A model generated the notes under the pieces. The model made no database searches. It was given only the letters and a program-made list of their open reading frames with translations, and had not been told where the DNA came from. This document shows positions 1-31,549 of a DNA stretch of 64,000 bases, piece by piece. The stretch covers positions 1,116,001 to 1,180,000 of the forward strand of contig JBLDXI010000042.1 in the NCBI GenBank assembly GCA_047495785.1. Direction: 5' to 3'. The position numbers and the translations under genes were made by a program. The stretch's first letter is position 1. Every line of letters begins with the position of its first letter. The DNA is from Lepidodermella squamata (Eukaryota; Animalia; Gastrotricha).

Positions 1-372
1 AATATCTGCCTACAACTTGTTCTGATCGCCGCTGGTTTCATGCAACCTGAACAACCGGATCGACCGAACTTCTGTATCACTGTCGTACTGGCCTATGCAG
101 TTTCGCAATCGAGCATCAGCGAGTCGATACCGAAATCTGCGGAAATTCCGTACATTTTGATATTCCTAGCCGGTCAAATGGCGATTGCCGTGCTTTGCGC
201 CATCTATTGCCTTATTGTCTGCGATTTAGCCAGTATAAAGCGGTTTCAAGGCATTAAACCTAATTTCATGAATATGAGCCTCATTCGCCTGATTGATTGT
301 ATCGTTTTTGGGTTCATTCTCCTCATCACTGTTTTGACCGATGTCGTTGTGATTGTGTTAATGACCAAGTAA
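1..372 (+). CDS. Cys-loop ligand-gated ion channel subunit, copy A (3' part of last exon only; end of M1 to M4)
   Basis: NICLQLVLIAAGFMQPEQPDRPNFCITVVLAYAV...LIDCIVFGFILLITVLTDVVVIVLMTK*; near-identical to the last exon of copies B-E; truncated by the window edge. Confidence 0.9.
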   Translation, partial: NICLQLVLIAAGFMQPEQPDRPNFCITVVLAYAVSQSSISESIPKSAEIPYILIFLAGQMAIAVLCAIYCLIVCDLASIKRFQGIKPNFMNMSLIRLIDCIVFGFILLITVLTDVVVIVLMTK

Positions 373-845
373 ACAATTCGTACTTATTTCATTTGACGAT
401 TTCGTATAAATGAAGTAGCGAAAAGCTATTTTCTAGGTATTGCCTTCACAAGAGCAAGTAACAAATAACCATGGTATATTAATTCGATCTGAAGCTAACA
501 GAAAGCAAATCGTATAATTCGCAAACTGACCACTCATAGCGCGAAACTGAACGCTTAACACGAACGTCTATCGTTTATGCATGATAACAAAAAAATGTGA
601 GATTCTAGTTGAAGACCAAGGTATATTAAATTTTTGAATACCTCAATCGGTAAAAAACCCAGGAGCCAGTGTGTTAAACGCCAGACGATTTAAAAAAAAC
701 CACTGGGACTAAGTAGTATTGGCGTTGATTGCCTCCATGGCTCCTAAATATCCGGCATAGGTTCGGCTATCAAAGCGGTACAATATATAAGAGTCGTGAG
801 TCGTGAGCCTGAAGTTTGCAAGTTTTTTCTCTTAGCTCAAATCAA

Positions 846-895
846 CCCAGACGTTGACGTCAGCGTTGACGTCAGCGTTGACGTTCATGTCTGGG
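846..895. repeat. 12-bp tandem (GTTGACGTCAGC) within a short inverted repeat; possible MITE remnant
   Basis: cccagac-gttgacgtcagc-gttgacgtcagc-gttgacgttcat-gtctggg; the ends are inverted; contains two TGACGTCA palindromes. Confidence 0.5.
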
Positions 896-1087
896 CCTCT
901 CAAATCCCTCTCAATCGATATTCCTATACTGCATACGTTGAAAACAGTCTGGCGCGGTTTTCATTTCAAAGAGTAAACATTAAACATGGGATTCCGCTTT
1001 ACACTAGGCTAGCGAGTCTGACGCAGAGCTAATGTTATTTCAAAACCACTGTTTCATAATACCTATTTTCGTACATACGTTTTTTCC

Positions 1088-1149
1088 AAGTCCGGAAATT
1101 TGACAGGAGATTGATACAGGTTGTTTATTTACTCAACGCAAATCACTAG
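1088..1149 (+). promoter_or_regulatory. Conserved upstream block of the channel genes (AAGTCCGGATATTTGAC ... ATCACTAG)
   Basis: Variants at ~1088, ~4992, ~16868, ~17589 and ~24038, i.e. 130-143 bp upstream of the ATG (254 bp in copy C). Confidence 0.55.
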
Positions 1150-1217
1150 TTACGTATGACTTTCGCACGGGTTGAAGCATATTGTCTGTAGATTCTTCTA
1201 GAGCCGGACTCTCTTGC

Positions 1218-4200
1218 ATGATGTATCGTTACCGCTTATCATTTTCGATCATTTTTACAGTCTATTTGGCGTATTCTGAAGCTGGGAATCTTGACGAAGA
1301 GATTTCGTTGTTCAACCCGGATGCGATTGAGCTGAGAGACATCCTGATCTCAAGATGCCGTCTCGACCAGCGCATTCGACCTGTCGCTAACTTCAGCGAA
1401 ACTACGCTCATTCATGCGTCAATATCGCCTTATTATTTCCGAGGGATAAACGAAGACGAACAATCGTAAGCATTCGAAACCTATATGTCTGCCATGAATC
1501 TATAGTTACATGATTTCATAGTTTCTCTTTTCACGGCGAGCTTGCTCTCAGGTGGAAGCATCCATGCGCGATATGGAATAACACTTCAAACTATTCCCAT
1601 ATAAGAATCATCGATTTAAAGGGCTCGGAGACTTGGACCCCTGCGTTCACTCATATAAATGCATTCGAAATGTCGACAATTGAAAGGTTTCTAAGAAGAA
1701 CGTTGAATTATCGCCATTGTATAGATCCTTCTGTTTTCCACCTTAGTTTGAGCAAGAGTGCAACGATTTTGTTTTACCGGGATGGCCAAGTAACAATGTA
1801 CCTGCAAAGTACTTACAAATCAACTTGCAGCCTCAAGTAAGTGAAAAGTGAACAATCAGTTTCGTCGCCTGGCTTCTTTTCTGGGCGTGAGGAAGGGGGT
1901 TTCGGATAGGATAGGAAAGCCTTGAGTGGCTTGCCGAGTGGCTCTGAGAAGAGCTTCAAAGTTCTCATGTATGATGCATACGCAGACATGTTCTGGGTGG
2001 TCACCTTTCAGGCGAATATGTAACGGTCGAAGATCACTGAATTTTGTAATTCCTATCAATAAAATCAAATTTGATTGCTCAATATTATATTCAAAAACGA
2101 GACAAACCCAAGAGATTGTTAGGATTTTCCGCTATATACAGCCCAAATGCCTCGCGTAAGTAATGCTCCATATCGGCTTTGCTAACTGGCTTGCCATCAA
2201 TTTTCACCACGTCCTTTTGGTTCGGGGATATACGGCTGTTGGCGTGGTAAAACGCGATGACTTTCGACTTCGTTTCTTCTGGCAAAGCGTTAGCTGGCTT
2301 CCTTGCAACAGGATCAGCAACCTTGACCCCATGCCGCTCAGCCAGCTTTTTCACCAGAATAGCCCTCTTCTCGTCGGATATTGCTTTCGGCAATGATGAC
2401 TCAAGCTTCTTGAGGTCGCGACTTGATCGGCTTCGGTCATAAGTGTCTTCTTCCTGAGGCCCAACGCTGAGATTTTCCATGGCTGTACATGCTGAAACCG
2501 CTCGTGTTCTCGCGTGTGCCGCTCTGTCCTTGACTCGGACATTTTTCTTCTTCGTCTCAGCAAGCAAAGCTCGCTGCTCACGCCTAGCAATCCTAAATGA
2601 AAAAGTTTACCATATAGAAATGCTTCGCAATCAAATCTTACGTGTTCTCAATCCTAATTTTCTCTTTTTTCTCCTCCGAGTAATTAGCGCGACATTTTGC
2701 CGAACGCTCAGCTGCAGTACTCATGACATTAACAAATCTTAAAAACAGTTATTTGAATCTGAAACTGGAACTTAGTGGAAGTATTTCAGTAATTATTCGA
2801 TAATAATTAAATAGTAATAATAATAACAAAATTGGGTGCTTCTAATGTCCGACTGTGACCATGTCTACATGCGGATAATGAAAACGCATCATGACTCCTT
2901 CTGGAACCCGCGAAAATACTTATTTGCATAGGTTTTACAGTGACAGCCGCTCCTTTTCCACGCTAGAAATTATTTTTTTCTAATATCCGTTGTGTCTGTC
3001 CGCAACATCTGTCCGCAACAAAAAATGTCTGTCCGCAACAAGGGTTTCGACGCCGAAACGATGAGTCACTCTGCATTTATATTTCCAAATCGGTACATCA
3101 TATATTTGCTGACTTGGAAAAATTAATGTGGGGCTAGCTGAGAGCCTTCAGTAGCATGTGAAGCCAAAATTCATGTTTACCGTTGCGGACAGACAATTTG
3201 ACAGATCAATTTTTTGACAGGATTTGACTATTACGCAAGTGACAAGTAACTTCGGAGTTTGCTGATTTTTTATGCTGAGTAACCAAACTGCTACAATATA
3301 TAATAACATCGTGAAGTCGGTCAAGTAATTGGTACATTTTATTGACATCAAGATGTACAAAAATAGGCAAATTTGACATTGGATCAGACGGCTTTGCTAT
3401 TACATAACAACGGAGTGGAAAATTAGCCAAAATAGTTGTAAATATTCAAATTATGAAAGATCAAATCCTGGTCTATCCAAAAATATGTAACATGAGGGTT
3501 ATATCGCTTGTTTATTTTCGACTGCTTCTGCGACAAACTCGCGGAATCGTCCATATTATACTTAGGATTCCCATCCTTTGTTAGTAGAAAATACTTTGGC
3601 AGTTTATTCCTCTTATGCCGGCCCTGTCTGAAAATAGAAGTTTTAGAACCACGATTTTGGAGAAGCTTCTAGTTCATATCAGAAGAATTAGGATAATAGT
3701 TGGAATACAGCTATATATGCACCATGGCAACTGTGAACCTATTGATGAATGAAAACTTTGTTTTTCGCAGCTTCTTGAAATTCCCATTCGACAAGCAATC
3801 CTGCAGTATGGACCTGGAATCTTTTCACATCACACGGGTAACAAAATACCTTCTCAAAGATGGGGGTATTAAATTGATGAACATTGGCAAATTTATCAAG
3901 CCAAGTGAAATGTGGCTACTGAAGTCATACCACGCCGTAGACGTGTTGGAAGAAAGTGAGAATGGAGACTTGAAGTACTCACTGTTACGATTCACCTTCG
4001 AATTCGAACGACGTTACGGGTTTCATTTGCTGACAATAATTTTCCCGAATATTTGCTTGCAACTGGTGCTGATCGCCGCTGGTTTCATGCCGCCTGAGCA
4101 ACCGGATCGGCCGAATTTTTGCATAACTGTCGTACTGGCCTATGCAGTTTCGCAATCGAGCATCAGCGAGTCGATACCGAAATCAGCCGAAATTCCTTAT

Positions 4201-4419
4201 ATTCTGGTATTCCTAACCGGTCAAATGGCGATTGCTGTGCTGTGCACTATTTATTGCCTTATTGCTAGCGATTTGGCCGGGCAAGAGCGGTTCCGAAAAA
4301 TGTCAGCTTACTTGATGAGAATGAGCGTCATTCGCGTTATTGATTGCATCGTTTTTGCTTTCATTCTAATCATCTCTATTTTCATCGATGTTGTTGTGCT
4401 TGTATTAATGAGCGAGTAA
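1218..4419 (+). CDS. Cys-loop ligand-gated ion channel subunit, copy B (exons 1218-1465, 1522-1686, 1747-1836, 3771-4419)
   Basis: Signal peptide; RIRPV; spliced Cys-loop C-x13-C (CSLNFLKFPFDKQSC); four TM helices; all introns GT-AG and in frame; intron 3 is enlarged to 1934 bp. Confidence 0.9.
1856..2724 (-). mobile_element. Spliced, C-terminally truncated DNA-transposase-like gene (254 aa; exons 2724-2642, 2592-2108, 2052-1856), antisense in intron 3 of channel B
   Basis: Two GT-AG introns (49 and 55 bp) join MSTAAERSAKCR...VIAFYHANSRISPNQKDVV...LREAFGLYIAENPNNLLGITKFSDLRP...HVCVCIIHENF. I recognise this motif series from an invertebrate DDE transposase family (tentatively Sola2-like); no catalytic domain follows. 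Confidence 0.7.
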
Positions 4420-5245
4420 ACAATGTATATTTGTTGCAAATAATTGAAATGATTTGTTGTTGATGTTTCTAGCCTCCAGCTTTTCATTTATCAAAACCAA
4501 GTTATATCTGACCGTAATTTGCCGGGAAACTAGAGAGCGCTGAACGCTTGCACCTTTAGCCAATTCTCTTCAAAGTGAAGTCCTGACTCTACACCCATGC
4601 AAAACTGACTTCGTAGCGCGAAATCGAATCAAAAATTCATTTTCCAGACTTCGGTCTACGATCTTGCGTTTTGTCGCAGAATGCGCTGTAAAAATACGCA
4701 CCCTTTTTGAAATGAGACATTTCTAGCTATATTTCGGCATTATCTTTGAGTATCTTCGCTGTATCTTCGAAGTCATTTTAATAGCTGACTCATATCTTTC
4801 GGACGGCGGAGTCAATTACGATGCCTTCGAACAACTCGTTAAACCTACCTGCCCGGTGAAACTTCCATCTCAGATAATGGTATAACTCGTGCTGTCGTAT
4901 ACTTTGCCGAAAATTGCGACTCCGCTTATTGCCAATCATTGCTTAGTTTATACCGTTTATTGCTTATGTTTTCGTGCATTTTCATTTTTCCAAGCCCGAT
5001 ATTTGACCGGATATGGATCTTGGTTGTGTATTTACTCGGCACTAATCACTAGGTAGATATGGGGTAATTCCATGTCATTTCGGCCAAGCCCATGTTTTCA
5101 AAACCATCTAAAATTATTTGCTTCGGATAGAGCATCAATTTGGTCGTTGGTCGAATTGACATGTCATTGCTCTATGGCGCTCAATAAATGTGCCTGGGTG
5201 GGGCATATTTTGCATCCGACTGAGAATGACCGCCTCTTCTATAGG

Positions 5246-6649
5246 ATGTTTCAGCACCTCATATCATTCATAATTATTATCGCCTATTTGGCTTATTCAA
5301 AAGCTGGAAATCTTGACGAGGAAATTCCGTTGTTCAGACAGGATGCACGTGAGTTGAGAGACGTCCTAATATCAAGATGTGGCCTTGATCAGCGGATTCG
5401 ACCTGTTGCTAATTATAACAAAACTACGCTCGTTTATGTATCAGTGTCGCCCTTTTATTTCCGAGGGATAAACGAAGACGATCAATCGTAAGAATTCATC
5501 TTTTGTATGTCCTGAATCTGTGGTTTGATATGTTCCTAGGTTCTCGTTTTACGGCGAGATAGTTATTACCTGGACGCACCCATGCGCGACTTGGCAGCAC
5601 ATTTCGAACTATTCACACATCAGGGCCATCGATATGAAAGCTCCGGAGACGTGGACGCCTATCTTCAATCATATTAATGCGTTCGGAATGTCAAATATTG
5701 AAAGGTTTTCAATCATAACTTGAAATTTTTAAGCTATTGATTTTCCTTCAAGCTTGAGAAAGAGTGCTACAGTCGTTTATTACAAGGATGGCCAAGTACA
5801 AATGTACCTTCAAAGCGAGTACAAATCACTTTGTAGCCTAAAGTAAGTCATCAATATAACACGATTTGTCGGCTTTAAATCTAGAATTGAATAAGAGTTG
5901 TATTCGTAGCTTTTATTTAGGGTCAACAAAATCAGGGCAAGATTGGTTATGACTTGAACATTTTACCATTTAAGTGACTTTGATTCATATTTCGCAGCTT
6001 TTTGAGCTTTCCCTTCGACACGCAATCTTGTAGCATGAACATCGAATCTTTCTTCATCACAAAAATAACGAAATACGTCCTTAACGATGAGGGCATCAGC
6101 ATGATGAGCGTTGGCGGCTTCATTAACCCGAGTGAGATGTGGCGTTTGAAATCTTACAACGCCGGTTACGAGTGGGACGAAAATTATCCGAATGATGATT
6201 TTGAATTTTCCCTACTACGATTCACATTCGATTTCGAACGTCGTTACGGGTTTCATTTGCTGACAATATTTTTCCCGAATATCTGCCTACAACTGGTCCT
6301 GATCGCCGCTGGTTTCATGCCGCCTGAGCACCCGGATCGGCCTACATTCTGCATAACTGTCGTACTGGCCTATGCAGTTTCGCAATCAAGCGTCAGTGAA
6401 TCAATACCAAAATCGGCGGAAATTCCGTACATTTTGATATTCCTAGCCGGTCAAACAGCGATAGCTGTGTTTTGCGCCATCTATTGCCTTATTGCCAGCG
6501 ACTTGGCCGGGCGGAAGCGGTTCCAAGGCATTAAAGCTAATTTCATGAATATGAGCCTTATTCGCATGATTGATTCTGTCGTTTTTGCGTTCATTCTCGT
6601 CATTACCGTTTTCATTGATGTTGTTGTCATTGTATTGATGACCAAGTGA
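5246..6649 (+). CDS. Cys-loop ligand-gated ion channel subunit, copy C (exons 5246-5487, 5540-5704, 5753-5842, 5998-6649)
   Basis: Same four-exon structure; Cys-loop CSLNFLSFPFDTQSC; M1-M4 present. Confidence 0.92.
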
Positions 6650-8540
6650 ATAATTCGCTTTTATTGTATTAGTCTACTTCTTCAAGGGAGTTCCGGTGTC
6701 CAAGATCGCACCCTGCAGCAACAAATTTGTTTGAATAAAAAAAAGTGGAAAGTATCGGTTTTACATGTTATGTGTCTTGAATTATATCACGTCCTGTTAT
6801 TTTTATTTTGTAGCCTGGTTTATAGACCCCTTGGTTTTATGGACGTAAAGAAAATGAATAAAAACACGCACGCGATTCGTTGCGTTCACTTTGTAACAGG
6901 ACACCAGTCATTGAATGACGAAAATACATAACGCGAGTGATTTATGAATGAGTCCTTTTAAAAACAGTTCTTTTTTTCATGGTCAAATCAATTTAGAGTT
7001 ACTAACTCAAATCTATTCATGAATTGCGGTTTTAAAATTGTTATCGCGACTGCGGCGCTCGTTGGCGTAGTCGAGTGTACGGCCTGGGTTCGCTGTTATT
7101 CACAGGTCGATGATTCGTTTGTCGATTGCCGTCAGCTTCCAGGCGGCTGTCTTCTCTTGCAAGAGTACCAGGTAAAATTCTGAACTTATTACCTTATTTG
7201 ATCAACAATTCGGGTTATTCTTAAGTATGGGGGAAACCTAACGGATCAAACGATGTGCTTGCGAGCTGTAAGTCTTGCTTCAAAGTACCCTGATAGTGAT
7301 AGTAATTTATGATTCTAGACTGCCAGGATGTGCTACCGCTGGTCAACCTTCACGATTCGCTGTAGACCTGGAATTCCAGGCTGTAAACGCGATGAAATAC
7401 AGGTGATGATACCTAAACTAGTCGAATTGCTGTGAAATTTCTGTTTTGGCCAGGTCAGTGGCTCGTTCAACGGGGCTATCCCGCACAAGACGAATGTTGT
7501 GAATTGTTTTTCGAGTGAAGCCACTTTCACGGTAATAGGATTCAACCGTACTATATTCAGGAATGCATTTCACATTGGACTGATAGAGCCAAGCCTTCGA
7601 CTCGTGCCTCGCATCTGCTGGTGGCGAATTCGGTACATGCGTTCCTAGTGGCACGCCCTGCTTCAATGATTTCCCCGTTAGCCTTGTCCTCCCTCCCAAG
7701 TTCTAATCGAAATTGTTCTTTCAAAGGTAAAGGGCCAGTCGAAAATTGGAAATCTGGACACTTGCCTTCGTAGCGCTAATGGTGCGGTGGCTAGTCATTG
7801 TTCAATAAACGTTTTCGATTTGTTTTAATTTTTCGATAAAGCTACGCTTCCTGATGTTCGGAAGCCACACAAACGGTGTTTCAATGCAGCGGATGGCAAA
7901 TTCACGGCATGCTGTCTTAACAGCACCGGCTGCCTCGCCAACGAAACTGACCAGTACTCGAGCCGAGTCTATCGGAACAAGGACAACTGTGAATCATGGG
8001 TAAGAGCTGCTTGCGATTTATCTCAATTCAATATGAATTGGAAAAATGAATTTTGTATAGTTCGCTGCTCAGTGTGACACTCCTGTAGGCAAGAAATGCT
8101 ACAGCATCTGCCCAGCTGAAACTACAAGAGTACGTTTAGAGTGAATTGGCCTTCGTTCTTCGCTCTATACTCGATTGCTCTTTTCACAGGTGAAAACCTA
8201 TAGTTCTGGGCCCAAGTTCGCGGCAAATCACGCCAGGTGCTTGCTCGAAATTCTCGCTCTAGGCTCCAACAAGACGTACTTCACATCACCACAGTCTATC
8301 GGCACCTTCCGCATGCAACTAGATGCCTGTGCAGAAAACGGCGGCCGGCTAGCCACCATGCAGACCAACCCGGACAAAAAAGTTTCATGTTGTAAACTCG
8401 TGTAAATGGTGTGAAAACACGTCCGTGTATTTTGCTGTAAAATCAGGTAGAAATGGTAACGACTCCTATGAATTTACATGATCACTTTATTGATTCAGCT
8501 CACACGAATTTACATTTAGACCTTAATTGGCCGCCGTTCG

Positions 8541-8787
8541 CCCTGCGCTTCCACGGGATTACACGGAGTTGTGAGTCTGGTTGATTTCGCCGGAAACGCT
8601 GGAAAAACCTGTCTTGACTTGCTTCTCCCAGCTGAATCTTCAAACTTGAGATTTCAACGACATTTCGCCGTTGTAAACTCATGTAAGAAGATTCAGCCAA
8701 GCAAAGCAAGTCAAGACAAGTTTTTACAGCGTTTCCGGCGAAATCAACCAGACTCACAACTCCGTGTAATCCCGTGGAAGCGCAGGG
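8541..8787. repeat. Long hairpin/foldback (arms ~100 bp)
   Basis: ccctgcgcttccacgggattacacggagttgtgagtctggttgatttcgccggaaacgct... recurs as its reverse complement ending ...cccgtggaagcgcaggg. Confidence 0.85.

Positions 8788-11644: not shown

Positions 11645-11645
<1 letters not shown>

Positions 11646-11706
<61 letters not shown>
11646..11706. repeat. (TAA)n microsatellite, ~20 units
   Basis: Directly visible. Confidence 0.95.
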
Positions 11707-11707
<1 letters not shown>

Positions 11708-13800: not shown

Positions 13801-13900
13801 GGATCCTTATATTCCTTATAAGATTCCTATATTCTTTATAGGATTCCTATATCCTTTACAGGATTCCTATATCCTTTTCATGGTTCCTATATTCCTATAA
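13801..13900. repeat. 20-bp minisatellite x5 (GGATTCCTATATTCCTTATA-like), intronic
   Basis: Five imperfect 20-mers with no spacers. Confidence 0.85.
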
Positions 13901-14988
13901 TGCCCGAACTTATGGGCCCAAATTGTACGATCAAAGTGGTTTCATTTTTCATTCAAGCTTTTCGCCTTGGCCTTGGGAATTTGAGGGCATAGGTTATAGG
14001 ATCCTTGAATTATCAGGTATCAGACCAGAATTTTGCGACTAAAGGGTCCACCAATGGGGGTTTCAACATCGACCTTGTCAACTTGGTGGTATGATACGTA
14101 CCCCGAATCTCTCGGTACTTCGCGCACTGATCCGCAAACTATAGATACTCTTTATAAAACAATTTTTTCCGATTTCCGATGTATTGTTCAGTTTCCTTGC
14201 TCTGCCTTTAGGTCTGGCAATAACTGGAAACGGCTTGGTCGATAAGGACTGTTCGCAACCAGCTGACAGCGCGGTTTGTTACAGAAGTGGCAACGTGAGT
14301 TCTGGAACTTTTTATCGCTTAGCTACACAGATTGCATGCTTAGGATTCTGCAAGTCTCAGGTCTCTTTTCGCGAAAGACCCTGTCGGTAACTGGTCGCAT
14401 GCTTCGGCAAAGTGCATATCGTTAAGCCGGGCGCTTCCAACCGTAACTGACAATGATACGTACAACCGAACCATCAGTATGATGAACGATTTCGGCACAT
14501 TGTACGTTTGGACAAATGGAAAAAGGTCGGATCTGGCTGAGAAAACTTGGATAACAGGCCAGACCTTCGATAGCTCGCTGATTCAAATCGCCGGTAACCC
14601 TGCGCCCAGCGAAACAGAGTACTGTTAGTTTTTCGCCGAACGTTTTCGGTTGCTTTGTATTTGATATATTCTAGGCTACGCGTTGGACAATAATCAGCTG
14701 AAGCAGCAACAATGCTTCAATCTCATCGCTGGATTGTGCGAGCGCATATAAAAATTGATGCGAAATATAACTGCGAGATGTCAAGACTGAAAAATGCTAT
14801 GATTAGCTTTCAACCTCACAATTATACCTTATATCGATTATCATTCCGCGCATTATCAATCAATAAAACGTTTCTGCTATCAATCTGGTAACAATTGGAT
14901 TTTCATTGACCATGGCGGCGTGACACTTTTGAATAGCTGCGGCAGAATTCTTGCAGAATTTTTGATTGTCCATTGTTTGTTTCTACAG

Positions 14989-16120
14989 GATCCAAGCATT
15001 TCTAGGTCGGCATAACACAAGTGTTCGGGCTGAGACGGCCTCTTACGAATCTTTTGTGTCTCTCCCACCTTTGGTTCATCCGTTATACAACGGAAGTCGG
15101 AATTTCTACGACTACGATTTCGCTCTACTGCGATTGATGAGTCCTGTTCCTAGATTCTCGCAGCAGATCAAACCGATTTGTTTACCTGACGTGACAATCA
15201 TGTGCCGAAACAACACTTTCACCGCAAATTCGATAGACCGATGCGATTCAGCGGTTGCAGCTGGCTGGGGTCATTTCGCGCTCAGTTAGACACCATCTTA
15301 CACCACCGCCTTACCACTATTTCGTATTTTAGCCAGGTTATCTGAGATCCCGAGGAAGCTGGAACTTCAAGTTCGATCTTACCGAAATTGTTCACTGGAG
15401 TATTCCCGCGGTCGATCTGATCCGGTCAACATCACCGACTCGAAGATGTGTTTGGCTGCCGATGACAGCGACGTTTGCTTTGGAGATTCTGGAGGCCCGC
15501 TAATGTGCTCGAAATCAAGGCAGATTTACCTACTCGGTATTATTTCGAATGGCGATGAGTCATGCAACGGATACTCTCCGGGAATCTACAGTCGAGTCTG
15601 CAAGGTTGTTGATTGGATTTCGGAGAACTCAGATGTTCGAAGCTACAGGAGTACTCCAGAACAGTCTTGTGCCGTACCGAATGTAACCGCGGGATTTGTG
15701 ACCCGTGTGGACCCAGATACTTCGGAAGATACTGGCTTAGTTCTAAGGCCTGGAGCTGCTGTGGAAAAAGGCGGGTTCGTGAGCGTTAAATGTAACCTTG
15801 GATATACCTACTCATCATCAGTTAATTTTGCCACGTGCATGCCACCATTTCGACCACTGATAAATGGAAGGTGTACCCTTCTAGGTAAGGAAAAGCTCTA
15901 AACATTTACAAGGCATTTGAAACGCGTCCTCTATTGAGGCTGCGTTACTGTTCCAGCGATTCAAAACGGCAACGTATCTCTTGGTCTGTCTAACGTCGGA
16001 GCCACCCGACGTATATTCTGCAACCTAAACTTTGCGATCCGGGGGAATGCTTCCATACTGTGCCGCTCAAATTCGACGTGGTCTCAGCCTGGTTATTGTG
16101 TCTCAAGACTAGGAAGATCT
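14989..16120 (+). pseudogene. Trypsin-like (S1) serine protease lacking its N-terminal part, followed by two sushi/CCP-like domains (exons 14989-15284, 15333-15884, 15939-16120)
   Basis: YDYDFALLRL (Asp102), SDVCFGDSGGPL (Asp189, Ser195), PGIYSRV; then CAVPNV...VSVKCNLGY and CVTVPAIQNG...FCNLNFAIRGNASILCRSNSTWSQPGYC. No His57 (TAAHC) exon, signal peptide or terminal exon found. Confidence 0.75.
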
Positions 16121-17010
16121 GTTAGTTTTGTCTAACCTAGTAGTGTTTCTGGGAACCGGGAAATCAGATCGCAAACCGGCTAAGTCGCGTTTTAAAACTA
16201 GATTTCAGGGGTATTGGTTAGGCCGAGCCAATAGCCTATTTGTGCTTTATTCTTTTACCTTATGATCTAAGTTGAACAAATGAATCAACATCGAATGTTT
16301 CCAAGCCCCACATTGGGCAGCTTCACATTGGCCAGTCGGGCACACCCAGGGGCGCCCGTGGATGAATTAAAGGTTCATTGCCTGGAACTCTTAAGTTGGG
16401 GGTACCCCCGTTACCCCCGTAATTTGCACATTTCAGCATGAAAATGATCATACCCTGTATAGATTCGTGAAATGTACGAGCAGTTGTGGAATGTCACAGC
16501 CGAGACGACTGACGTAGAGCAGGTGCGGCGACTCGTTGCGGAGATCGACGAATCCACTGGCGGCAAGTTCGACCCGAACTGGAGAGTGGAGAGCCGCCAG
16601 CCCATTGATAACAGGGTGATCACTCTGTTCTCTATGTTTTTATCACTTGGTTCATTGCTTAGTTAACGGGATCTCTCAACATCGCAGCAGGTACTTCCTT
16701 GAGTAGTCATTGCGTTATAATCCGAAGCGATAATATTCATTTCAGCCGCTGGGTAAACATCGAGAATTCCATTTCAGCAAACCAGGAAAGGCTCACGAGA
16801 GTACGCGTCATTAAATTCAATTAATTCAAGTAAATTGTGTATGCTTTCGTGCATGTGTATTTTTCTAAAGTCCGGATATTTGACAGGGCATGGATTTGGG
16901 TTGTGTATTTGCTCTGTACCGATCACTAGATAGACATTTCGACTTTCAGCTAAGTTTTAAAAGTAGGGCGTATTTCCCATCCAACAACAGCAGTTGGCCT
17001 CTTCTATGTA

Positions 17011-17115
17011 ATGTATCAGCAACTCATACCATTAATAATTCTTGCAGCGTATTTGAATGCTGGGAGTCTTGACGAGGAGATTCCGTGGTTCCAACCGGAT
17101 GCTCAAGAACCTTAA
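17011..17115 (+). pseudogene. 5' remnant of a channel gene (upstream region from ~16600 plus start of exon 1)
   Basis: MYQQLIPLIILAAYLNAGSLDEEIPWFQPDAQEP*; matches the start of copies D/E and then breaks off. Confidence 0.85.
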
Positions 17116-17728
17116 AGTTGTAACTTGTAACTAAGTGAGTGATCACTTAGTTCAGCTTCACTCCAACCGAAGGCCGACAGTGTTAATTACATGGTATCGG
17201 TCTTGGATGAAAAAAGTAGCAGACGAAAAGTCTGGATGTCGATTTGGTCGTCTTCGAACAGCTCGCCACGCCTGCCTGCCCGCTGAAACGTCCATCTCGG
17301 ACAGTGACTACTGACTACACTCCTGTTGCAGGTTGTAGTACTTTTCCAACATTTATTTCAGCCGCTGAGTAAACATCGAATTCCATTTCAGCAAGCCAGG
17401 AAAGAGGAAAGAGAGGGAGATATGTCCGTGAATACTCATCGCGTTTTAATCCGAAACTACATTCATTTCAGCCGCTGATTAAACATCGAATTCCATTTCA
17501 GAAGCCAGGAAAGACTCACGTGAGTATGCGTCATTAAATTCAATGCATTTAAGTGAAATGCGTATGTTTTCGTGCATGTGTTTTTTTCAAGTCCGGATAT
17601 TTGACAGGATGAAGATCTGGGCTGTGAATTTACTCGGTATCGATCTCTAGATAAACATTTTGCCTTTCAGTTAATTTCTAAAAGTAGGGCGTATTTCCCA
17701 TCTAACGACAGTTAGCCTCTTCTATGTA

Positions 17729-19083
17729 ATGTATCAGCAACTCATACCATTGATAATTCTAACAGCTTATTCGAAAGCTGGGAATCTTGACGAGGAGATT
17801 CCTTTGTTCAACCCGGATGTTCTTGAGTTGAGAGACTTTCTGATTTCAAGATGTCGCCTCGATCAACGTATTCGACCTGTTTCTAATTTCAGCGAAACTA
17901 CGCTCATATATGTATCGGTGGAACCATTTTATTTTCGAGGGATAAACGAAGACGAGCAATCGTAAGATTTGTTCTTTCTTATTTCTATTACCATGAATTT
18001 ACTTGTGTCCCTAGGTTTTCGTTTTATGGCGAGCTTGCTATCAGTTGGATGCACCCATGTGCGGCCTGGCAGCACGTTACGAATTACTCTCATATAAGGG
18101 CCATCGAGTTGAAAGGTTCCGAGACGTGGACTCCTATCTTCACTCATATAAATGCTTTCGAAATGTCGATAATTGAAAGGTTTTTAGCGAAATCTTGGAA
18201 TTGTTGTCTATCAATTTTCCTTTAAGCTTGAGCAAGAGAGCTACAGTTGTGTATTACAAGAATGGCAAAGGTGCAATGTACCTGCAAGGCGCTTACAAGT
18301 CACTTTGTAACCTAAAGTAAGTCAATGTAGTGATTTTTAATTGTTTGAATAAGAGTTGCATTCGGGCTAGGGTCAAGCTTAGTTATGACTTTTTACCACT
18401 TGATTGACTGTGATTCACAATTTGCTTTACGCAGCTTTTTGAACTTTCCCTTCGACAAGCAAACTTGTAGCATGGACATCAAATCTTTCTTCACCACACG
18501 GCTAACGAAATACCTCTTCGAGAATGGGGGCATCGAAATAGTGAAATTTGGCGAATTCATTAACCCGAGCGAAATGTGGCGATTGAATTCATACAACGCC
18601 GGATACATTTTGGACGAAAGCGATAATGGGGAAACAAATTATTCATCACTGCGATTTACCTTTGACTTCGAACGGCGTTACGGATTTCATTTGCTGACAA
18701 TATTTTTCCCAAATATCTGCCTACAACTGGTTCTGATCGCAGCTGGATTCATGCCACCTGAGCACCCCGATCGGCCAACATTTTGCATAACCGTCGTACT
18801 GGCCTATGCAGTTTCGCAATCGAGCATCAGCGAATCCTTACCAAAATCAGCCGAGATACCTTACATTTTGCTATTTCTAGCCGGTCAAATGGCCATTGCT
18901 GTACTTTGCGCCATCTATTGCCTGATTGCTAGCGAGTTAGCCAGCAGGAAGCGGTTTTTACTCATTCAAGCCAATTTCATGAATATCAGCCTCATTCGCC
19001 TGATCGATTGTATCGTGTTCGCAGTCATTCTAATCATCACTGTTTTAACAGATGTCGTTGTGCTTATATTAATGATCCAATAA
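17729..19083 (+). CDS. Cys-loop ligand-gated ion channel subunit, copy D (exons 17729-17961, 18015-18179, 18227-18316, 18435-19083)
   Basis: Cys-loop CNLNFLNFPFDKQTC; same architecture as B and C. Confidence 0.92.
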
Positions 19084-20600
19084 CGATTTTCAATCGCATT
19101 GACTTTAAAACCTATTCTTTAAAAAGGTTTAGCACATTTGACGATTTACTAGAATTTACCTGATAGATGATGCCTTTAGCTAGTTGAGAGGATGAGATTG
19201 CCCCAGTTCTGGACTCCAATTATTATTCATTAGTTCTTTCTCATCATTAGCCAACGCTCGTGCCAGCAAGATAACGTGTCGCACATCATTATAATTCATC
19301 CAATTTGGCGTCCTGTTGGCTATATAAGCCCTAAAGAAATACAATAAAATATCCGAGAGCTTCGATTATTTGATTTTGTCGTTGTTCAGTCTGATAGCCG
19401 TAGTACGAAACCAGGTAAGGGTTATCTACCCTTCACTAGTCACATTGACTGGTGGGTGTTGAATTAAAATTGAAACGGGCTCTCGAGCACATAGACAGTG
19501 AGAACATGATTAGGAATCATTTATCCAGATTTTTCGAAAAAATTCCGAAGAAGCTGGTGGCGAAAGAATCGAGAATTTGCCGAAATTCGCCTATAATAGG
19601 TAATTTTTTGGAATATTGGGGAAATTTATTCTTGCGAGACGATGAGTTGCACCTTGACTCATTTGATGGAGGGCAATCCAGGATTTTCTTTACAAAAGTT
19701 CAATCATTTTGGGAGACCATAATAGCGCTGCCGATTTTCGAAATAAAAATATTTATAAATGCTGACCTCTTGTACCTGTACTTGTAACTCGTTGTTTTAA
19801 CCTTTCAGTTTGTTGGTTCCCTTCTGTAACACCTCAGAATTTTCCACTTTCAGGCAATGTTGTCTTGATCGTTGCTTTTGTCGCCAGAGAGTTGGACGAA
19901 CCAGTTCACGAAAGACGTTTTAAAGTTAAACTGTTAAGCTTGATTTGAATTTTAAACTTCAATCATCGCGAACCCTTGTTCGACCCAGTTATTAAAGTGG
20001 ATTATTACCCACTTGTAGCTTGTAGTATTTAACGTCTGAGCCATAAAATTAGTCGGCCACTGTGTTCACCATTGTTCGCGGATTAAGTCAGACGGGCGGA
20101 TTTTTAAATCACCGCCCGTCTGATTTTTGTCTTAACCCGAGCAATAGATCAACTCAGTGGCCATCTGTTCTGGACAAACATTAAGACAAACCAGAAATAG
20201 ACAAAAATTAACAACAGCAAAACAATAAAGCTTAATACACAACAAAATATTTACATTTACCCCCAATACCGTAACGAGTGGTAACTTTGGACAAAACGTG
20301 TTTTTCGAACATTAAAAATCAGCCTTTGCGCCTAAATTTTTGAAATTTTGGCCAATGGTGGGGACGGTGATTCTTGAATTTACTGCAAATTTTAACAATT
20401 TTTAGAATTTTACCTGACCTTTGGCTAATTCATATGTGTTCCGGTAACTTTAGAGAATTAGAGGGTAATTTTGGACACTCATTTGCATATGCAAAAATGA
20501 ATCACGTGACCAGATAAATGTGTTGAATGAATGCTATGATTAATGGTTGATTGGTTGATTGAAATGTATGTATATGTTGCTCAGAATGGAATTCGATATA

Positions 20601-21930
20601 TTACCGAGTATCGACATGCGTGCAGTGGTTTGCACAACTTGAACAGCTAACCATCAAACTTAGACCATTTTTTAGCAAGAGAGGCTCAAACCGCTGCCAT
20701 GAGTAATGCAACTCGGCATGCGGACTCTCACAGCCGAAAATCTTGATTGTAGTTTCGAACAAAGTCGCTGCCGCCTCGACTATGGCGTCGTGAGTAAATT
20801 CATGCTGATTTCTCATTTTTCTGTCCAACAAGAAGTGGTGAACGTCGTGATACTTAGGAGGGATGAGGTCAACAAAATGCGCGTCGTTTGATTCCATAAA
20901 ATTGCAGATTGCGATTCGAACCTTCAAAGTATGAACAATTAGCATCAAGTCAATTAGCATGAGGACACAGTATCCTTACTTTGTGTTGATGCTTGGTCGA
21001 GCCAGTTATCAACCACGAGAAGGTAGAGAAAAAGCAGTTACCATTACCAATGATTGGAACAATATGTGCAGGAGCTTCACGTAATGCAAGTAAGCCCGGC
21101 GTGTTAGGCCTCTCTTTAACCTCTCCGACGTCTATATTGCTCTTAGCCGCGCATTCAAGCTGCCAATCAAGAGTCACAGAGACAAATTCAATATTTTCAC
21201 CACCAAAATTTCGCTGCGACTCCAACTCCGTATCCTTCTGTTTTTGCTCATCAGCCTTCGCCACAGCCTTGGCTGTTCTGCCATTTTTCTTTGCCAGTTT
21301 ATCATCGTCCTTGGCTGTTTTCGTTTTCTCGCGTTCGATTTTCCTCTCTTTTTTCAGGCGTTTTGCCTCTTCAGCTTCCTCTGCAGCATTCTTGAACCTT
21401 TGATAAGCATCCTCTCCAGTCATGCATTCTCCTTCTGCGAGCACGATTCTTTTCCGTTTACGCCGTGATTCAGCCGGATCTTTTGAATGGGCTATGCTTG
21501 CTTGTAGAGCCTCTTTCACAACTTTCGAAATTCTATTTTCCAAATCATTCTCCGACTGAGAGGCCACAGTTGCTGCCACTCCCAGAAGCGACGCGGCACT
21601 CGCCAATAAAGCGCTGAAGGGCATCTTGGGTTCGTGTTTCTTGTTTCCAGCGTGGAGGTTGCTGGTTTTTACGGCTGACTGTAGAGCTCTGCCAGCCCGA
21701 TTTAGCGCGGAAATCGCAGTGACGCCAACTCGTTCTTTCGATGAGTTCTTCATAAGTCTAATTGACTTGCGTGGTGATGAGCCTGTTTTGATTACTCGCT
21801 CCTCGGCCTGAAAGCTGTCCTCCTCTTCGCCATCGACATCAGACGTCTCCGAGTCTTCCGAATCGGTTTCTTCCTTCTTCCTCACCAGGCCGACAGTGGT
21901 AATTGTCCTATTGGCTGTTGCGCAATTCAT
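20601..21930 (-). CDS. Coiled-coil plus OTU-like cysteine protease domain protein (3' end uncertain)
   Basis: IVPIIGNGNCFFSTFSWLITGSTKHQHK, a GT-AG intron, then VRIAICNFM...VEAAATLFETTIKIF...WQRFEP (OTU pattern); preceded by RKRKRIVLAEGECMTGED plus a K/E-rich coil resembling pogo transposase C-termini. Confidence 0.7.
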
Positions 21931-21964
21931 TTCTAGTGTTAATTTATAGGAATTGTATTTTGAA

Positions 21965-22246
21965 ATGAAACTTTGTCTTTGGCTGTTATTTTTCTCGGTC
22001 CTCGCTGCTGGCGAAAGCAAGAAGACAGTTCGGAAGAATGCCAAAGTAGCCGACGATAATTTGAACCGAGCCCTGGAACGTATCAGTAGAGGAGTGTTAT
22101 CGTACCGTCAGGCGGCCTTACGATTTAAGATAGGCAAATCGACGCTGTATAACAAGGCTAACAATTTACATTCAAGGTCTATTGGCGGGAAGCGAGCATT
22201 GAGTGACAAAGAAGAGGCAAGCCTCGTTCAAGCGTTCAAGCGATAA
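21965..22246 (+). pseudogene. Pipsqueak-type HTH, N-terminal fragment of a pogo-like transposase
   Basis: DNLNRALERISRGVLSYRQAALRFKIGKSTLYNK...GGKRALSDKEEASLV, then a stop. Confidence 0.75.
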
Positions 22247-22254
22247 AGGCGGGT

Positions 22255-22623
22255 TTGGAATTTTTTATTGTTGCCTCCGGCAAATGTTTTTTTTCGGCGC
22301 CACTCATCGAGGCCAAGGATAACAGTGACAGGTCGGTGCTGATGATTGCGGCTAAAAAAGAACAGTTAGAAGTAGTTCGACTGTTGCTGGATCGAAAAGC
22401 TGCAATCGAAGCCAAGGATATAGATAGTTGGACAGCGTTGATGTATGCGGCTGCATTTGGGCAAGTCGAGGTAGTTCGAATGTTGCTTGACAGAGGTGCA
22501 AATAAGGATGCCGTAAAATCAGATGGCAAGACAGCTCTAGATATTGCTATTTGCGAAAACAAAATAGCTATAACAGACTTGCTGAGATCGCGAGGAGCAA
22601 GCCGAGCAAAGTCATCTTGTTGA
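22255..22623 (+). CDS. Ankyrin-repeat fragment (three repeats; no ATG start identified)
   Basis: IEAKDIDSWTALMYAAAFGQVEVVRMLLDRGANKDAVKSDGKTALDIA. Confidence 0.8.
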   Translation: MEFFIVASGKCFFSAPLIEAKDNSDRSVLMIAAKKEQLEVVRLLLDRKAAIEAKDIDSWTALMYAAAFGQVEVVRMLLDRGANKDAVKSDGKTALDIAICENKIAITDLLRSRGASRAKSSC

Positions 22624-24177
22624 AATTAGTGCAATCACGCAGATCAATAACTTATATTACCAAATGCATAATAAAATGTTCCCTCTCTCGCCTTCAAGAA
22701 ATTGTGTGTCTTTCAGGAGGGGATCGTCACCCCTAGCTCGGCAGGGCCAGACAACAAACCTCTTTCTTCGGTTTCTTCGCTCGGTATCTAGTTAAAACCA
22801 CTAGTCATCTTTTCAAATAGGGCAAACAAATTTTGTCCATCCTTGGCAGCTCCTGGATCCAAGATCGCACCCTGTCTTCGAACAAAAAGCTGGAAAAATC
22901 CCTGTTGGTGAGGGAAAACAATATGCAACGGGTATCATTCGAGAACCATGAGAGGGCGGAAGATTTTCGCTATTCCGGCCTTATGTCTTCTTCAAAGTCA
23001 TTTAAAGAGGAGACAGCTAGGGATGCAATCAAAAAACTTGAAATCTCGGATGCCGCTAAACCAAGATCTTTCCGCCTGTTTTAATTCAAATTCGCTTTGG
23101 AGAGGGATAAAAGGATAATATACAGGGTGCGAAGTACAAGGGTGCTGGGGTGTCGCAACACCCCATAGCTCCGGGACTCCAACCAGGAGTAGGCTGAAAA
23201 ATCTACAGGGGGACCCAGTAAACATCTCAATTCCCTGATCCTACTTCGCACACTGAGAGGGACAGTAGTTTCAAATTCGGACGATATTTGAATTTTTGAG
23301 GACCCCGGATTTGTGAATATCCTGATGTGTCGGGATTTTTTTGATTTATCAGATTGAATGATTTGATTTGATGGATTTAGTTCCGTGAAAGTGGGACATT
23401 GATTGATTTTGATTGATTGAAGGGGTTCAGTGATTTAAGCCATAAATCAAATCCAAAGCTCTCTGCTTAAATTACCGTATAAAGTGGAATATAAGTGAGA
23501 ACTTGTGTTGCAAGGCATTTGAAATAATTGAAGAGAAGGGTTTTCGGACCGTTAAAAAGTCCTTTATAATATTCCGGTATATATGGTACGATACATTATG
23601 GTTTTGATAGAAGAAAAAGCTGACCGATTGCGGCGTGTTCGAACATTATCTCGCTACTGGTCACGCCTGGTCACGCCTGCACCTGCCCGATTAAACTTTT
23701 CTATCTCAAACAGTGGCTAAACTTGTGCTGCCGCACTCAGCCAAAAATTGCGACTGAGCTTATTACCCATTGATAACAGGATGATCACTGCGTTCTCCAT
23801 GTTTTTAAGTTAACGGTTTTAAAACTTGTTTCATTGCTCAGTTAACGGGATCTCTCAGCATCGCAGCAGGTACTTCCATGAGTATTCATTGCCTTATAAT
23901 CCAATAATGCGATAATATTCATTTCAGCCGCTGAGTAAACGAGAATTCCATTTCAGCAAACCAGGAAAGACTCACGCGTCATCAAATTCAATTGATTTAA
24001 GTTATCTGTGCATGTTTTCGTGCATGTGTTTTTTCCGAAGTCCGGATATTTGACCGGGCATGGATTTAGGTTGTGTATTTGCTCGGTACCGATCACTAGA
24101 TAGACATTTCGACTTTCAGTTAATGTTTACAAGTAGGACGAATTTCCCATCTAACTACAATTAACCTCTTCTACGTA

Positions 24178-25474
24178 ATGTACCAGCAACTTTTACCATT
24201 TATGATTCTTACAGCCTATTCGGAAGCTGGGAATCTTGACGAGGAGATTCCGTTGTTCAACCCGGATGCGCTTGAGTTGAGAGACATCCTGATCTCAAGA
24301 TGCCGCCTCGATCAACGTATTCGACCTGTCGCTAACTTCAGCGAAACTGCGCTCATATATGTATCAGTGGAGCCATATTATTTTCGAGGGATAAATGAAG
24401 ACGAACAATCGTGAGAATTGTTCCGCCTTATTTCTACCATGAATTTACTTGTGTTACCAGGTTCTCGTTTTACGGCGAGCTTGCTATCAGCTGGAAGCAC
24501 CCATGCGCGACCTGGCAGCACATTTCGAACTATTCACACATAAGGGCCATCGATATGAAAGGTTTGGAGACTTGGACTCCTGTCTTCACTCATATAAATG
24601 CGTTCGAAGAGTCGAATATTGAAAGGTTTGCTAGCTAAACTTTGAATTTCGCCAAACTATCTACGCATTTCCCTTCAAGCTTAAGCAAGAGAGCTACAGT
24701 TGTATATTACAACGATGGCAATGTAACAATGTACCTGCAAGGCGCTTTCAAGTCACTCTGTAGCCTAAAGTATGTTAATAAGAGTTGTGATTCAACTTGC
24801 GGTGATTTAAAATTCCTTATCGCAGCTTTTTGAACTTTCCTTTCGACAAGCAATCTTGTGGCATGAGGATCGAATCTTTCTTCAACACACGGCTAACAAA
24901 GTACGTTTTCCAAAATGGTGGCATCAAAATAGTGAACTTTGCCGAGTTCATTAACCCGAGTGAGATGTGGCGATTGAAATCTTACAATGCGGTATACATT
25001 CCTGATGATAGCGATGATGGGGAAGTGCCCTATTCTGCACTACGATTCGCCTTCGACTTTGAACGTCGTTACGGATTCCATTTGCTAACGATATTTTTCC
25101 CGAATATCTGCCTACAACTGGTTCTGATCGCAGCTGGTTTCATGCCGCCTGAACACCCGGATCGGCCTACATTCTGCATAACTGTCGTACTGGCCTATGC
25201 AGTTTCGCAATCAAGCATCGGCGAATCCATACCAAAATCCGCTGAAATTCCGTACATTTTGCTATTCCTAGCCGGTCAAATGGCGATTGCTGTGCTTTGC
25301 GCTATTTATTGCCTTATTGCTAGCGATTTGGCGGGTAGGAAGCCGTTTCTACGCATTCAACCTAATTTAATGAATACGACCCTCATTCGCTGTATTGATT
25401 GCATCGTGTTTGCAGTCATTCTAATCATCACTGTTTTAACCGATGTTGTTGTGCTCATATTGATGATCCAATAA
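24178..25474 (+). CDS. Cys-loop ligand-gated ion channel subunit, copy E (exons 24178-24410, 24461-24625, 24680-24769, 24826-25474)
   Basis: Cys-loop CSLNFLNFPFDKQSC; same architecture as the other copies. Confidence 0.92.
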
Positions 25475-30940: not shown

Positions 30941-31549
30941 GAATTATTGTCTGCAACTGATTGAAATAGTTTTGATTTTCAATCAGCCTTAAAATATCGA
31001 CTTTCAATGTTATCAATTTCTCAATGTTAATAGTTTGATTTCGTAATACGTTTCATGATATCAGACTTAACTTTTATCGAATGGAAGAATGCTCATCCGT
31101 TTCTCGCAAGCTACTTTGATAAAATAAAAATGTTTCTAGCGAAGTTCATGGAAAATCTGAAAATTCTAGGGGAATGAAATTCCGGAATGATGAAGTGCTG
31201 ACCGTTGACCCGAAAGCGCGGCGAAGCTATAAGAAAAGCTACCAGATCAGCAATCAGTATATTAGATCGCAAAATTATTCAGTCGATCACGAAGTACCTA
31301 ATCCAAAGGCTAGACAACGGAGATTATTGAAACCACCAATCCGGTCAGGGTCGCCATGAGCTCAAGCGGCTCTATAAGAAACATTATTCTGGAAGTTTCC
31401 TTTATTTTAAATCGCCCAGTGCCCACAAAACCAGTGTGGTATACCGTTAAAACTGCAGTTTTTATCATGCGGTTTTTACCGGTTTTTACCCGTTTGGTAG
31501 ATTCGAGTATTATTTCCACCGTTTTTCCACCACTTTTTCTCAGTTTCCA

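What the first reader, a model, noticed from the sequence alone, without database searches (positions are those of the whole stretch)
1..25474. Tandem expansion of minimal, non-canonical Cys-loop receptors: candidate chemosensory family
Seen: at least six copies in one orientation, complete ones ~380 aa with four exons, a canonical C-x13-C loop and an M3-M4 linker of only ~20-25 aa. By manual alignment to nicotinic alpha subunits there is no vicinal CC in loop C, loop B W is F (ESFF/KSFF/ESFH), the loop A Y position is I (HIN) and the loop D W position is E (GEL/GEI). Known: cephalopod chemotactile receptors are nAChR-derived, clustered, and have lost ACh-binding residues; conventional nAChRs have a long intracellular loop. 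Inference: an analogous, probably independent, birth-and-death expansion of ionotropic sensors for a ligand other than ACh.
Basis: partly seen in the sequence, partly recalled or inferred. Interest (0 to 1): 0.8.

Follow-up and report, generated by a model that had tools for sequence, protein, structure and literature searches.

The report
Tandem array of minimal orphan Cys-loop channels
Four intact neighbouring genes (plus one cut off by the window edge and one dead fragment) encode unusually small, nicotinic-receptor-like ion channel subunits that have lost the acetylcholine-binding residues; they are real, conserved and probably transcribed, but a role in chemical sensing is untested.

Summary
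Window 1-25474 carries, all on the + strand, four intact four-exon genes of 378-382 aa. It also carries the last 123 codons of a fifth gene, cut by the window start, and a dead promoter-plus-exon-1 relic.

All four have a C-x13-C Cys-loop with FPFD, four TM helices and a 20-aa M3-M4 linker. None has a vicinal CC. The acetylcholine positions read E (loop D), I (loop A) and F (loop B).

The copies are 72-85% identical. dS is 0.48-0.83 and dN/dS 0.16-0.29. The pore core is nearly invariant; loops B, C, E and F vary most. An RNA-labelled run covers exons of copies B and C but not introns.

[quoted passage not shown] Its marks are an x-D/E-R (mostly P-D-R) pore filter, a 15-27-aa intracellular linker and an extra conserved Cys. 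Nearest relatives are only 25-36% identical, all from metagenome eukaryotic contigs. Nicotinic receptors are the best solved match.

The chemosensory role is plausible but unsupported. Tandem expansions of orphan nicotinic-like genes are already described in invertebrates. The scan noted many similar arrays elsewhere in this genome.

The parts
1..372 (+). Copy A: the last 123 codons (M1 to M4 and the stop) of a fifth gene. The rest lies before the window start.
   Evidence: tblastn finds 81-82% identity to copy E residues 256-376. The ORF 40-372 is listed.
1221..4419 (+). Copy B, intact, 382 aa. Exons 1221-1465, 1522-1686, 1747-1836 and 3771-4419. Intron 3 is 1934 nt because of an inserted element.
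   Evidence: Model. In the RNA-labelled run X2, depth on copy B is almost all on exon 4. DNA run X1 holds an allele that skips 1642 nt (1910 to 3553) inside intron 3.
5246..6649 (+). Copy C, intact, 382 aa. Exons 5246-5487, 5540-5704, 5753-5842 and 5998-6649.
   Evidence: Model. X2 contigs with no mismatches lie on exon 4 and run past the stop codon to 6700. The bin 5800-5983, almost all intron 3, has zero depth.
16601..17109 (+). Relic: about 410 nt of upstream region plus the first 33 codons of exon 1. Homology then ends and a stop follows.
   Evidence: blastn finds 83% identity to 23766-24269, the upstream region and exon 1 of copy E. The translation hits a stop after codon 34.
17729..19083 (+). 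Copy D, intact, 378 aa. Exons 17729-17961, 18015-18179, 18227-18316 and 18435-19083.
   Evidence: Model. Pfam Neur_chan_memb and Neur_chan_LBD hit the terminal-exon ORF. 5-HT3A is the best solved match to this exon, E 3.5e-11.
24178..25474 (+). Copy E, intact, 378 aa. Exons 24178-24410, 24461-24625, 24680-24769 and 24826-25474.
   Evidence: Sequence read and model. It is 85% identical to copy D at the protein level, with dS 0.48.

Best explanation
[quoted passage not shown] They belong to a divergent clade with a minimal cytoplasmic linker.

Shown:
- A complete extracellular domain, a Cys-loop and four TM helices.
- Intact gating elements (FPFD, the pre-M1 Arg, the M2-M3 Pro and the 9' Leu) that barely vary between copies.
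- Intact reading frames under purifying selection.
- Exon-restricted coverage in an RNA-labelled run.

Inferred:
- The channel is cation-selective. It has Asp at -1', Glu at 20', Val at 13' and a cation-type M1-M2 length, although Pro replaces Gly at -2'.
- It opens when an extracellular ligand other than acetylcholine binds at subunit interfaces. Three of the four aromatic-box positions checked are replaced.
- The 20-aa M3-M4 linker leaves no room for the scaffold-binding and MA-helix region that anchors synaptic receptors, so a non-synaptic site of action is likely.
- The paralogues differ mainly in loops B, C, E and F, which tunes ligand preference or heteromer assembly.

The array grew by local tandem duplication within this lineage.
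For: - Gene models.
- Pfam hits.
- The HMMER alignment to 5-HT3A places P-D-R on G-E-R without a gap and E on the 20' D.
- A profile of relatives scores nicotinic subunits at 152 bits, a chain titled only 'Acetylcholine receptor' (8bx5) at 151 and 5-HT3A at 130. That 8bx5 is the orphan Alpo4 is from my memory, not the tool.
- An AlphaFold model of the nearest full-length relative has pLDDT 86.8. It matches alpha-7 and muscle nicotinic structures at TM 0.76-0.79, and M3 and M4 are joined by 12 non-helical residues.
- dN/dS is 0.16-0.29 overall. It is 0.02-0.12 for pre-M1 to M3 and 0.20-0.46 for the binding loops.
- Variable columns: 76% in loop C, 67% in loop B, 0-22% in M1 to M3.
- The window copies are monophyletic inside the short-linker x-D/E-R group. 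That group is split from the G-E-K long-loop hits at SH-aLRT 95.
- RNA-labelled run X2 covers exons only.
Against: - No functional data of any kind exist, and ion selectivity and gating are read from sequence alone.
- Pro at -2' is the anion-channel residue.
- The structure model is of a 28%-identical relative, not of a window protein.
- X2 is marked only 'RNA?' and is held as short assembled contigs, with no clean splice joints reported. Part of its depth in M1-M2 may come from paralogues elsewhere, because 31-mers are shared between copies.
- The reference classes in the tree are unnamed, so the placement relative to 5-HT3 and ZAC is not resolved.
Confidence: 0.65

Rival explanations
1. One reading: the family is an ionotropic chemoreceptor repertoire for environmental chemicals, expressed in sensory cells. 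It would have arisen independently of, but in parallel to, the cephalopod chemotactile receptors.
For: - The acetylcholine site is lost, the genes sit in a tandem cluster, and variation is concentrated in the orthosteric loops.
- Unchecked scan notes describe many more such arrays in this genome.
- There is a precedent: octopus chemotactile receptors derive from nicotinic receptors and bind hydrophobic ligands (PMC11526382).
Against: - No tissue information is available.
- dN/dS in the loops is below 1, whereas octopus receptors show positively selected pocket sites.
- These loops are the least constrained in any family of this kind.
- In bivalves, expanded nicotinic-like genes are linked to early development and to immune and stress responses, not to chemosensation (PMC6896357).
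Confidence: 0.25
2. The channels are gated by protons or metal ions, or are constitutively open, rather than by an organic ligand. This would resemble GLIC, ZAC or the pH-sensitive invertebrate channels.
For: - The minimal cytoplasmic linker resembles the prokaryotic proton-gated type.
- Three extracellular His are invariant in all four copies: K/T/M-H-P-C, S-H-I-R and H-I-N.
- The H-x-N of loop A is the consensus of the wider clade.
- pH-gated chloride channels appear among the solved matches at E 1e-7.
Against: - The His argument is speculative.
- Paralogue variation concentrated in loops B, C and F fits diversification for organic ligands better.
- The nearest solved relatives are ligand-gated nicotinic receptors.
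Confidence: 0.15
3. The subunits act in non-neuronal signalling, for example immune or stress signalling, or as modulatory partners that co-assemble with canonical subunits. This has been proposed for expanded nicotinic-like genes of bivalves.
For: - Jiao et al. report pathogen- and stress-responsive and pre-neural expression of expanded genes.
- The neighbours in the window are lectin, CUB, kringle and trypsin genes.
Against: Neighbourhood is weak evidence in animals. The organism is unknown, and there are no expression data by condition.
Confidence: 0.15
4. The copies are decaying duplicates without function.
For: One 5' relic and a polymorphic insertion in intron 3 of copy B.
Against: All four frames are intact at dS 0.48-0.83. 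dN/dS is 0.16-0.29, and 0.02-0.12 in the pore core. Splice sites are conserved. An RNA-labelled run covers exons only.
Confidence: 0.03

Closest known systems
Nicotinic acetylcholine receptor subunits (alpha-7, muscle type) and the wider cationic Cys-loop branch, including 5-HT3A
   Same: - The fold, the C-x13-C Cys-loop with FPFD, four TM helices and the 9' Leu.
- An acidic -1' and an acidic 20' ring.
- The best sequence-profile and structural matches.
   Different: - Loop A Tyr is Ile, loop B Trp is Phe, and loop D Trp is Glu.
- There is no vicinal Cys pair, and the W-x-P-D Asp is lost.
- The filter is P-D-R rather than G-E-K/R.
- The M3-M4 linker is 20 aa rather than about 100 or more.
- There is an extra conserved Cys pair, at positions 42 and 93 of copy E.
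Expanded, intron-poor, tandemly arrayed nicotinic-like genes of lophotrochozoans (Jiao et al. 2019, PMC6896357), including orphan Alpo4 (PMC10338036)
   Same: - Lineage-specific tandem arrays with few or short introns.
- Loss of acetylcholine-site residues and unknown ligands.
- Chain 8bx5, which I take from memory to be Alpo4, is the third-best solved match.
   Different: - The named mollusc proteins recovered here keep G-E-K and a long cytoplasmic loop. They are only 21-29% identical and fall outside the short-linker clade.
- Alpo4 has an intracellular domain of about 100 residues.
- The phylum of the window's organism is unknown.
Cephalopod chemotactile receptors
   Same: Derived from the nicotinic branch, clustered, acetylcholine site lost, cation channels.
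   Different: - No evidence of shared descent. No entry titled as a chemotactile receptor is among the 60 sequence rows or 50 structural rows listed.
- No sensory-organ expression is shown.
- No positive selection was detected with four sequences.
Prokaryotic pentameric channels (GLIC, ELIC)
   Same: A very short M3-M4 connection.
   Different: The window proteins have a disulfide Cys-loop, an N-terminal helix and a signal peptide, all eukaryotic features. Their sequence affinity is to animal nicotinic receptors.

Membership tests
Cys-loop / pentameric ligand-gated ion channel superfamily | Extracellular beta-sandwich domain with a C-x13-C loop containing the F/Y-P-x-D motif | tested here: met
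   The C-x13-C loop with FPFD is present in all four models. Pfam Neur_chan_LBD hits the part encoded by the last exon.
Cys-loop / pentameric ligand-gated ion channel superfamily | Four TM helices with a 9' Leu in M2 | tested here: met
   Pfam Neur_chan_memb scores 28.8 bits against a cut-off of 28.1. The 9' Leu is present in all copies. The model of the nearest full-length relative shows four TM helices.
Acetylcholine-gated nicotinic receptor (alpha-type subunit) | Aromatic box (loop A Tyr, loop B Trp, loop D Trp) and a vicinal Cys-Cys in loop C | tested here: not met
   The positions read I, F and E, and there is no CC. The register comes from the HMMER alignments. One loop-C aromatic (Y or F) is kept.
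Acetylcholine-gated nicotinic receptor (alpha-type subunit) | G-E-K/R intermediate ring and a long M3-M4 intracellular domain | tested here: not met
   The filter is P-D-R and the linker is 20 aa in all copies.
Short-linker x-D/E-R clade (unnamed, defined here) | An x-D/E-R (mostly P-D-R) filter, a 15-27-aa M3-M4 linker, and a conserved Cys after W-x-H/x-P in the beta2-beta3 region | tested here: met
   The feature table covers 166 aligned proteins: the 162 then fetched plus the 4 window models. The A2 consensus shows C41 invariant and C92 nearly invariant. The clade is separated from G-E-K hits at SH-aLRT 95.
Cephalopod chemotactile receptors | Descent from the cephalopod receptor clade and expression in sensory epithelium | not testable with these tools
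   No reference sequences could be brought into a tree. No entry titled as one is among the listed solved matches. No tissue data are available.
Lophotrochozoan expanded nicotinic-like genes | Tandem arrays of intron-poor, divergent nicotinic-like genes in a lophotrochozoan genome | tested here: inconclusive
   Tandem arrangement and three short introns are met. The organism's phylum is not disclosed and could not be inferred. The named mollusc hits are distant.

The most novel reading that the evidence does not exclude
The short-linker P-D-R channels form a large, so far undescribed clade of eukaryotic Cys-loop receptors. By unchecked scan notes there are many arrays in this genome, and the clade also occurs in tandem in uncultured eukaryotes. 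In this reading it serves as an ionotropic chemoreceptor repertoire, a further independent recruitment of nicotinic-type channels for environmental sensing alongside the cephalopod chemotactile receptors.
Probability: 0.2. Interest if true: 0.8.

Novelty: new variant of a known kind. Interest (0 to 1): 0.45.

Why it matters
Cys-loop receptors of animals are usually described as having a large cytoplasmic domain that controls trafficking, clustering and conductance. A naturally minimal, stable-looking eukaryotic subunit of about 380 aa could be a convenient subject for structural and gating studies.

The P-D-R filter is a natural test of how the -2' and -1' positions set charge selectivity.

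If the wider family proves to be sensory, it would be another case of neurotransmitter receptors turned into chemoreceptors.

As it stands, the window adds one small array to a phenomenon already documented in invertebrates: orphan, tandemly expanded nicotinic-like genes.

Tried and rejected
- The word-indexed protein search with the terminal-exon ORF found nothing. This was a sensitivity limit, since the exhaustive HMMER search then found 1879 relatives.
- The same tool with a family profile returned only two family members and three distant mollusc nicotinic-like proteins.
- Searching exon 2 alone against solved structures gave only chance hits.
- The source look-ups (30 proteins asked about; P0003 again, and P0005) gave only unnamed ENA or Logan metagenome sources, so no named member of the clade was found.
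- I tried to infer the organism from scan notes, accession strings in papers and the ESM Atlas. This gave only weak nematode-leaning leads, which I do not rely on.
- I did not submit a spliced window protein to the structure or search tools, because it has no reference and would have had to be typed. The structure shown is therefore that of the nearest full-length relative.
- A reading as recent gene conversion of the pore region was rejected, because dS there is 0.33-0.64.
Full report
**What is there**

The window is eukaryotic DNA of about 41% G+C. ORF listing and tblastn with a spliced model find five terminal exons on the + strand. Each encodes the second half of the Cys-loop through M4. 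They also find four complete first exons and one short exon-1 fragment. No further copies lie anywhere in the 64 kb.

Splice-aware modelling gives four intact genes:

| Copy | Exons | Length |
|---|---|---|
| B | 1221-1465, 1522-1686, 1747-1836, 3771-4419 | 382 aa |
| C | 5246-5487, 5540-5704, 5753-5842, 5998-6649 | 382 aa |
| D | 17729-17961, 18015-18179, 18227-18316, 18435-19083 | 378 aa |
| E | 24178-24410, 24461-24625, 24680-24769, 24826-25474 | 378 aa |

All introns are GT-AG and phase 2, at identical positions. Most are 47-60 nt. Intron 3 is longer in copies C (155 nt) and D (118 nt), and 1934 nt in copy B.

Copy A (1-372) is the 3' end of a fifth gene cut by the window edge. At 16601-17109 lies a relic. 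It is about 410 nt of upstream sequence plus 33 codons, 83% identical to copy E, after which homology stops and a stop codon follows.

The long intron 3 of copy B holds an insertion. This appears to be polymorphic: DNA run X1 contains a contig that skips 1642 nt of it, at a depth similar to the inserted form.

All were checked and hold.
- The Cys-loop is C-x13-C with FPFD.
- There is no CC anywhere in the proteins.
- The residue seven positions after the second loop Cys, the nicotinic loop-B Trp, is Phe.
- The loop-A position W+7 is Ile within H-I-N.
- The position five residues before the W of the W-x-D-x-x-L-x-W equivalent is Glu.

The register is anchored by the HMMER alignments to 5-HT3A and Torpedo/alpha-6 subunits.

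The M3-M4 linker is 20 residues. One loop-C aromatic (Y or F) is retained. The Asp of W-x-P-D is lost. From my own knowledge, Phe at the loop-B position is what glycine receptors use, so that residue alone is not exotic.

**Are the genes alive?**

- The four proteins are 72-85% identical. dS is 0.48-0.83 and dN/dS 0.16-0.29.
- Constraint is very uneven.
  - In pre-M1 to M3, dN/dS is 0.02-0.12 and few columns vary.
  - The orthosteric loops D, E, B, F and C reach 0.20-0.46.
  - Variable columns are 76% in loop C and 67% in loop B.
- dS of 0.33-0.64 in the pore region argues for protein-level constraint, not recent gene conversion.
- In run X2, labelled RNA and kept as short contigs, depth falls on exons and is zero in most intron and intergenic bins.
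  - It falls mainly on exon 4 of copy B and on exons 1 to 4 of copy C.
  - The one clear exception inside the genes is bin 2856-3039 in intron 3 of copy B, where DNA depth also rises.
  - Zero-mismatch pieces reach into the 3' UTR of copy C.
  - This supports transcription, but the run's nature and tissue are unknown and no clean splice joints were reported.
- DNA depth in X1 rises about ten-fold over the M1-M2 region. Some 31-mers are shared between copies. Both fit many paralogues, though this is not a copy count.

**What family is it?**

- Pfam finds both neurotransmitter-gated channel domains.
- With the terminal exon alone, the best solved match is 5-HT3A (E 3.5e-11). GluCl, glycine and nicotinic subunits are close behind.
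- An exhaustive HMMER search of 1.84 billion representatives gives 1879 hits. The nearest are only 25-36% identical.
- Aligning the hits to a model of the window proteins shows a clear split.
  - Many hits carry an x-D/E-R filter, most often P-D-R, with a 15-27-aa M3-M4 linker, an aligned M4 and a conserved Cys after W-x-x-P.
  - The rest are ordinary G-E-K/R subunits with long loops.
- In a maximum-likelihood tree the short-linker group plus the window copies is one side of a branch with SH-aLRT 95. The window copies form a clade (100) on a long stem.
- Every member whose source I looked up comes from unnamed eukaryotic contigs of a few metagenome assemblies or one Logan run (30 proteins asked about; P0005). 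They often sit in tandem pairs and are mostly intronless.
- One such gene shares two of the three window intron positions, including the one inside the Cys-loop.
- A profile of twenty full-length members scores nicotinic subunits best (152 bits), then the 8bx5 chain (151; Alpo4 by my memory) and 5-HT3A (130).
- An AlphaFold model of the nearest full-length relative has pLDDT 86.8. It superposes on alpha-7 and muscle nicotinic structures at TM 0.76-0.79, with M3 and M4 joined by 12 non-helical residues.
- The only named proteins recovered are mollusc 'nicotinic-like' predictions. They are distant, have G-E-K and a long loop, and lie outside the clade.

**How it probably works**

The gating elements are intact and almost invariant, so a working channel is the economical reading.

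The HMMER alignment to 5-HT3A places P-D-R on G-E-R without a gap and Glu on the 20' Asp. With Val at 13', I infer cation selectivity from established mutagenesis of the -1' position (my own knowledge). The -2' Pro, the anion-type residue, makes this worth testing.

Three of the four aromatic-box positions I checked are replaced, so the agonist is very unlikely to be acetylcholine.

The 20-aa linker leaves no room for the MX/MA region or for scaffold-binding motifs, which argues against a classical postsynaptic role.

Divergence between paralogues in the interface loops fits different ligand tuning or assembly rules. A second disulfide between Cys42 and Cys93 is proposed only from conservation.

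**Comparison with what is known, and novelty**

Massive, lineage-specific, tandem and intron-poor expansions of nicotinic-like genes with degraded acetylcholine sites are documented in molluscs and annelids (PMC6896357). Orphans such as Alpo4 have resisted deorphanisation (PMC10338036). Octopus and squid chemotactile receptors show that such genes can become chemoreceptors (PMC11526382).

The window therefore shows a known kind of event.

What I could not find described, within a limited full-text search, is the specific variant. It is a Cys-loop-bearing eukaryotic clade with a prokaryote-like minimal linker, a P-D-R filter and an extra Cys pair.

The chemosensory reading remains an analogy. 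The organism is not disclosed and I could not infer its phylum.

First-stage notes of this scan report many similar arrays elsewhere in the same genome, described as 5 to 17 loci each. I did not check them. This window is one small instance of a genome-wide family that the scan has already flagged repeatedly.

Noticed in passing
window 1837-3770 (intron 3 of copy B): A roughly 1.6-kb insertion appears heterozygous. DNA run X1 has a contig joining 1910 to 3553 at depth 36.8, against about 33 for the inserted form. Part of the insert (2856-3039) is repeated in the genome (depth 163) and is also covered in the RNA-labelled run. A 158-aa ORF on the minus strand (2091-2567) has no Pfam hit.
   Followed up: partly
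window 14966-15901: A trypsin-like serine protease gene lies between copies C and D, with two ORF pieces hitting Pfam Trypsin. A Cys-containing C-terminal extension is of unknown type.
   Followed up: partly
window 20267-22623: Between copies D and E lie a 364-aa ORF on the minus strand (no Pfam hit; a scan note calls it an OTU protease in a Pogo-like element) and an ankyrin-repeat ORF on the + strand (Pfam Ank_2, E 4e-34).
   Followed up: partly
window 26151-38666: A duplicated block (27932-31115 is about 79-82% identical to 34826-38666) encodes CUB, kringle and C-type lectin domains. This is a second local tandem duplication, unrelated to the channels.
   Followed up: partly
window 58881-63780: A dense set of 350-900-bp repeats, 69-77% identical, in both direct and inverted orientation. 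Its nature was not examined.
   Followed up: no
L001 5792-8388; L005 10001-12457: Metagenome eukaryotic contigs carry tandem pairs of the same short-linker P-D-R channel family. In L001 the first gene shares the window's intron positions 1 and 3. The neighbours include a class C GPCR and a GH20 hexosaminidase. The organism is unknown.
   Followed up: partly
P0024, P0034, P0035, P0043, P0046 and other hits of 800-1075 aa: Some relatives are two to three times the normal length, with the channel part at varying positions. They may be domain fusions or run-on gene calls. Scan notes mention lectin- and SRCR-fused Cys-loop channels in this genome.
   Followed up: no
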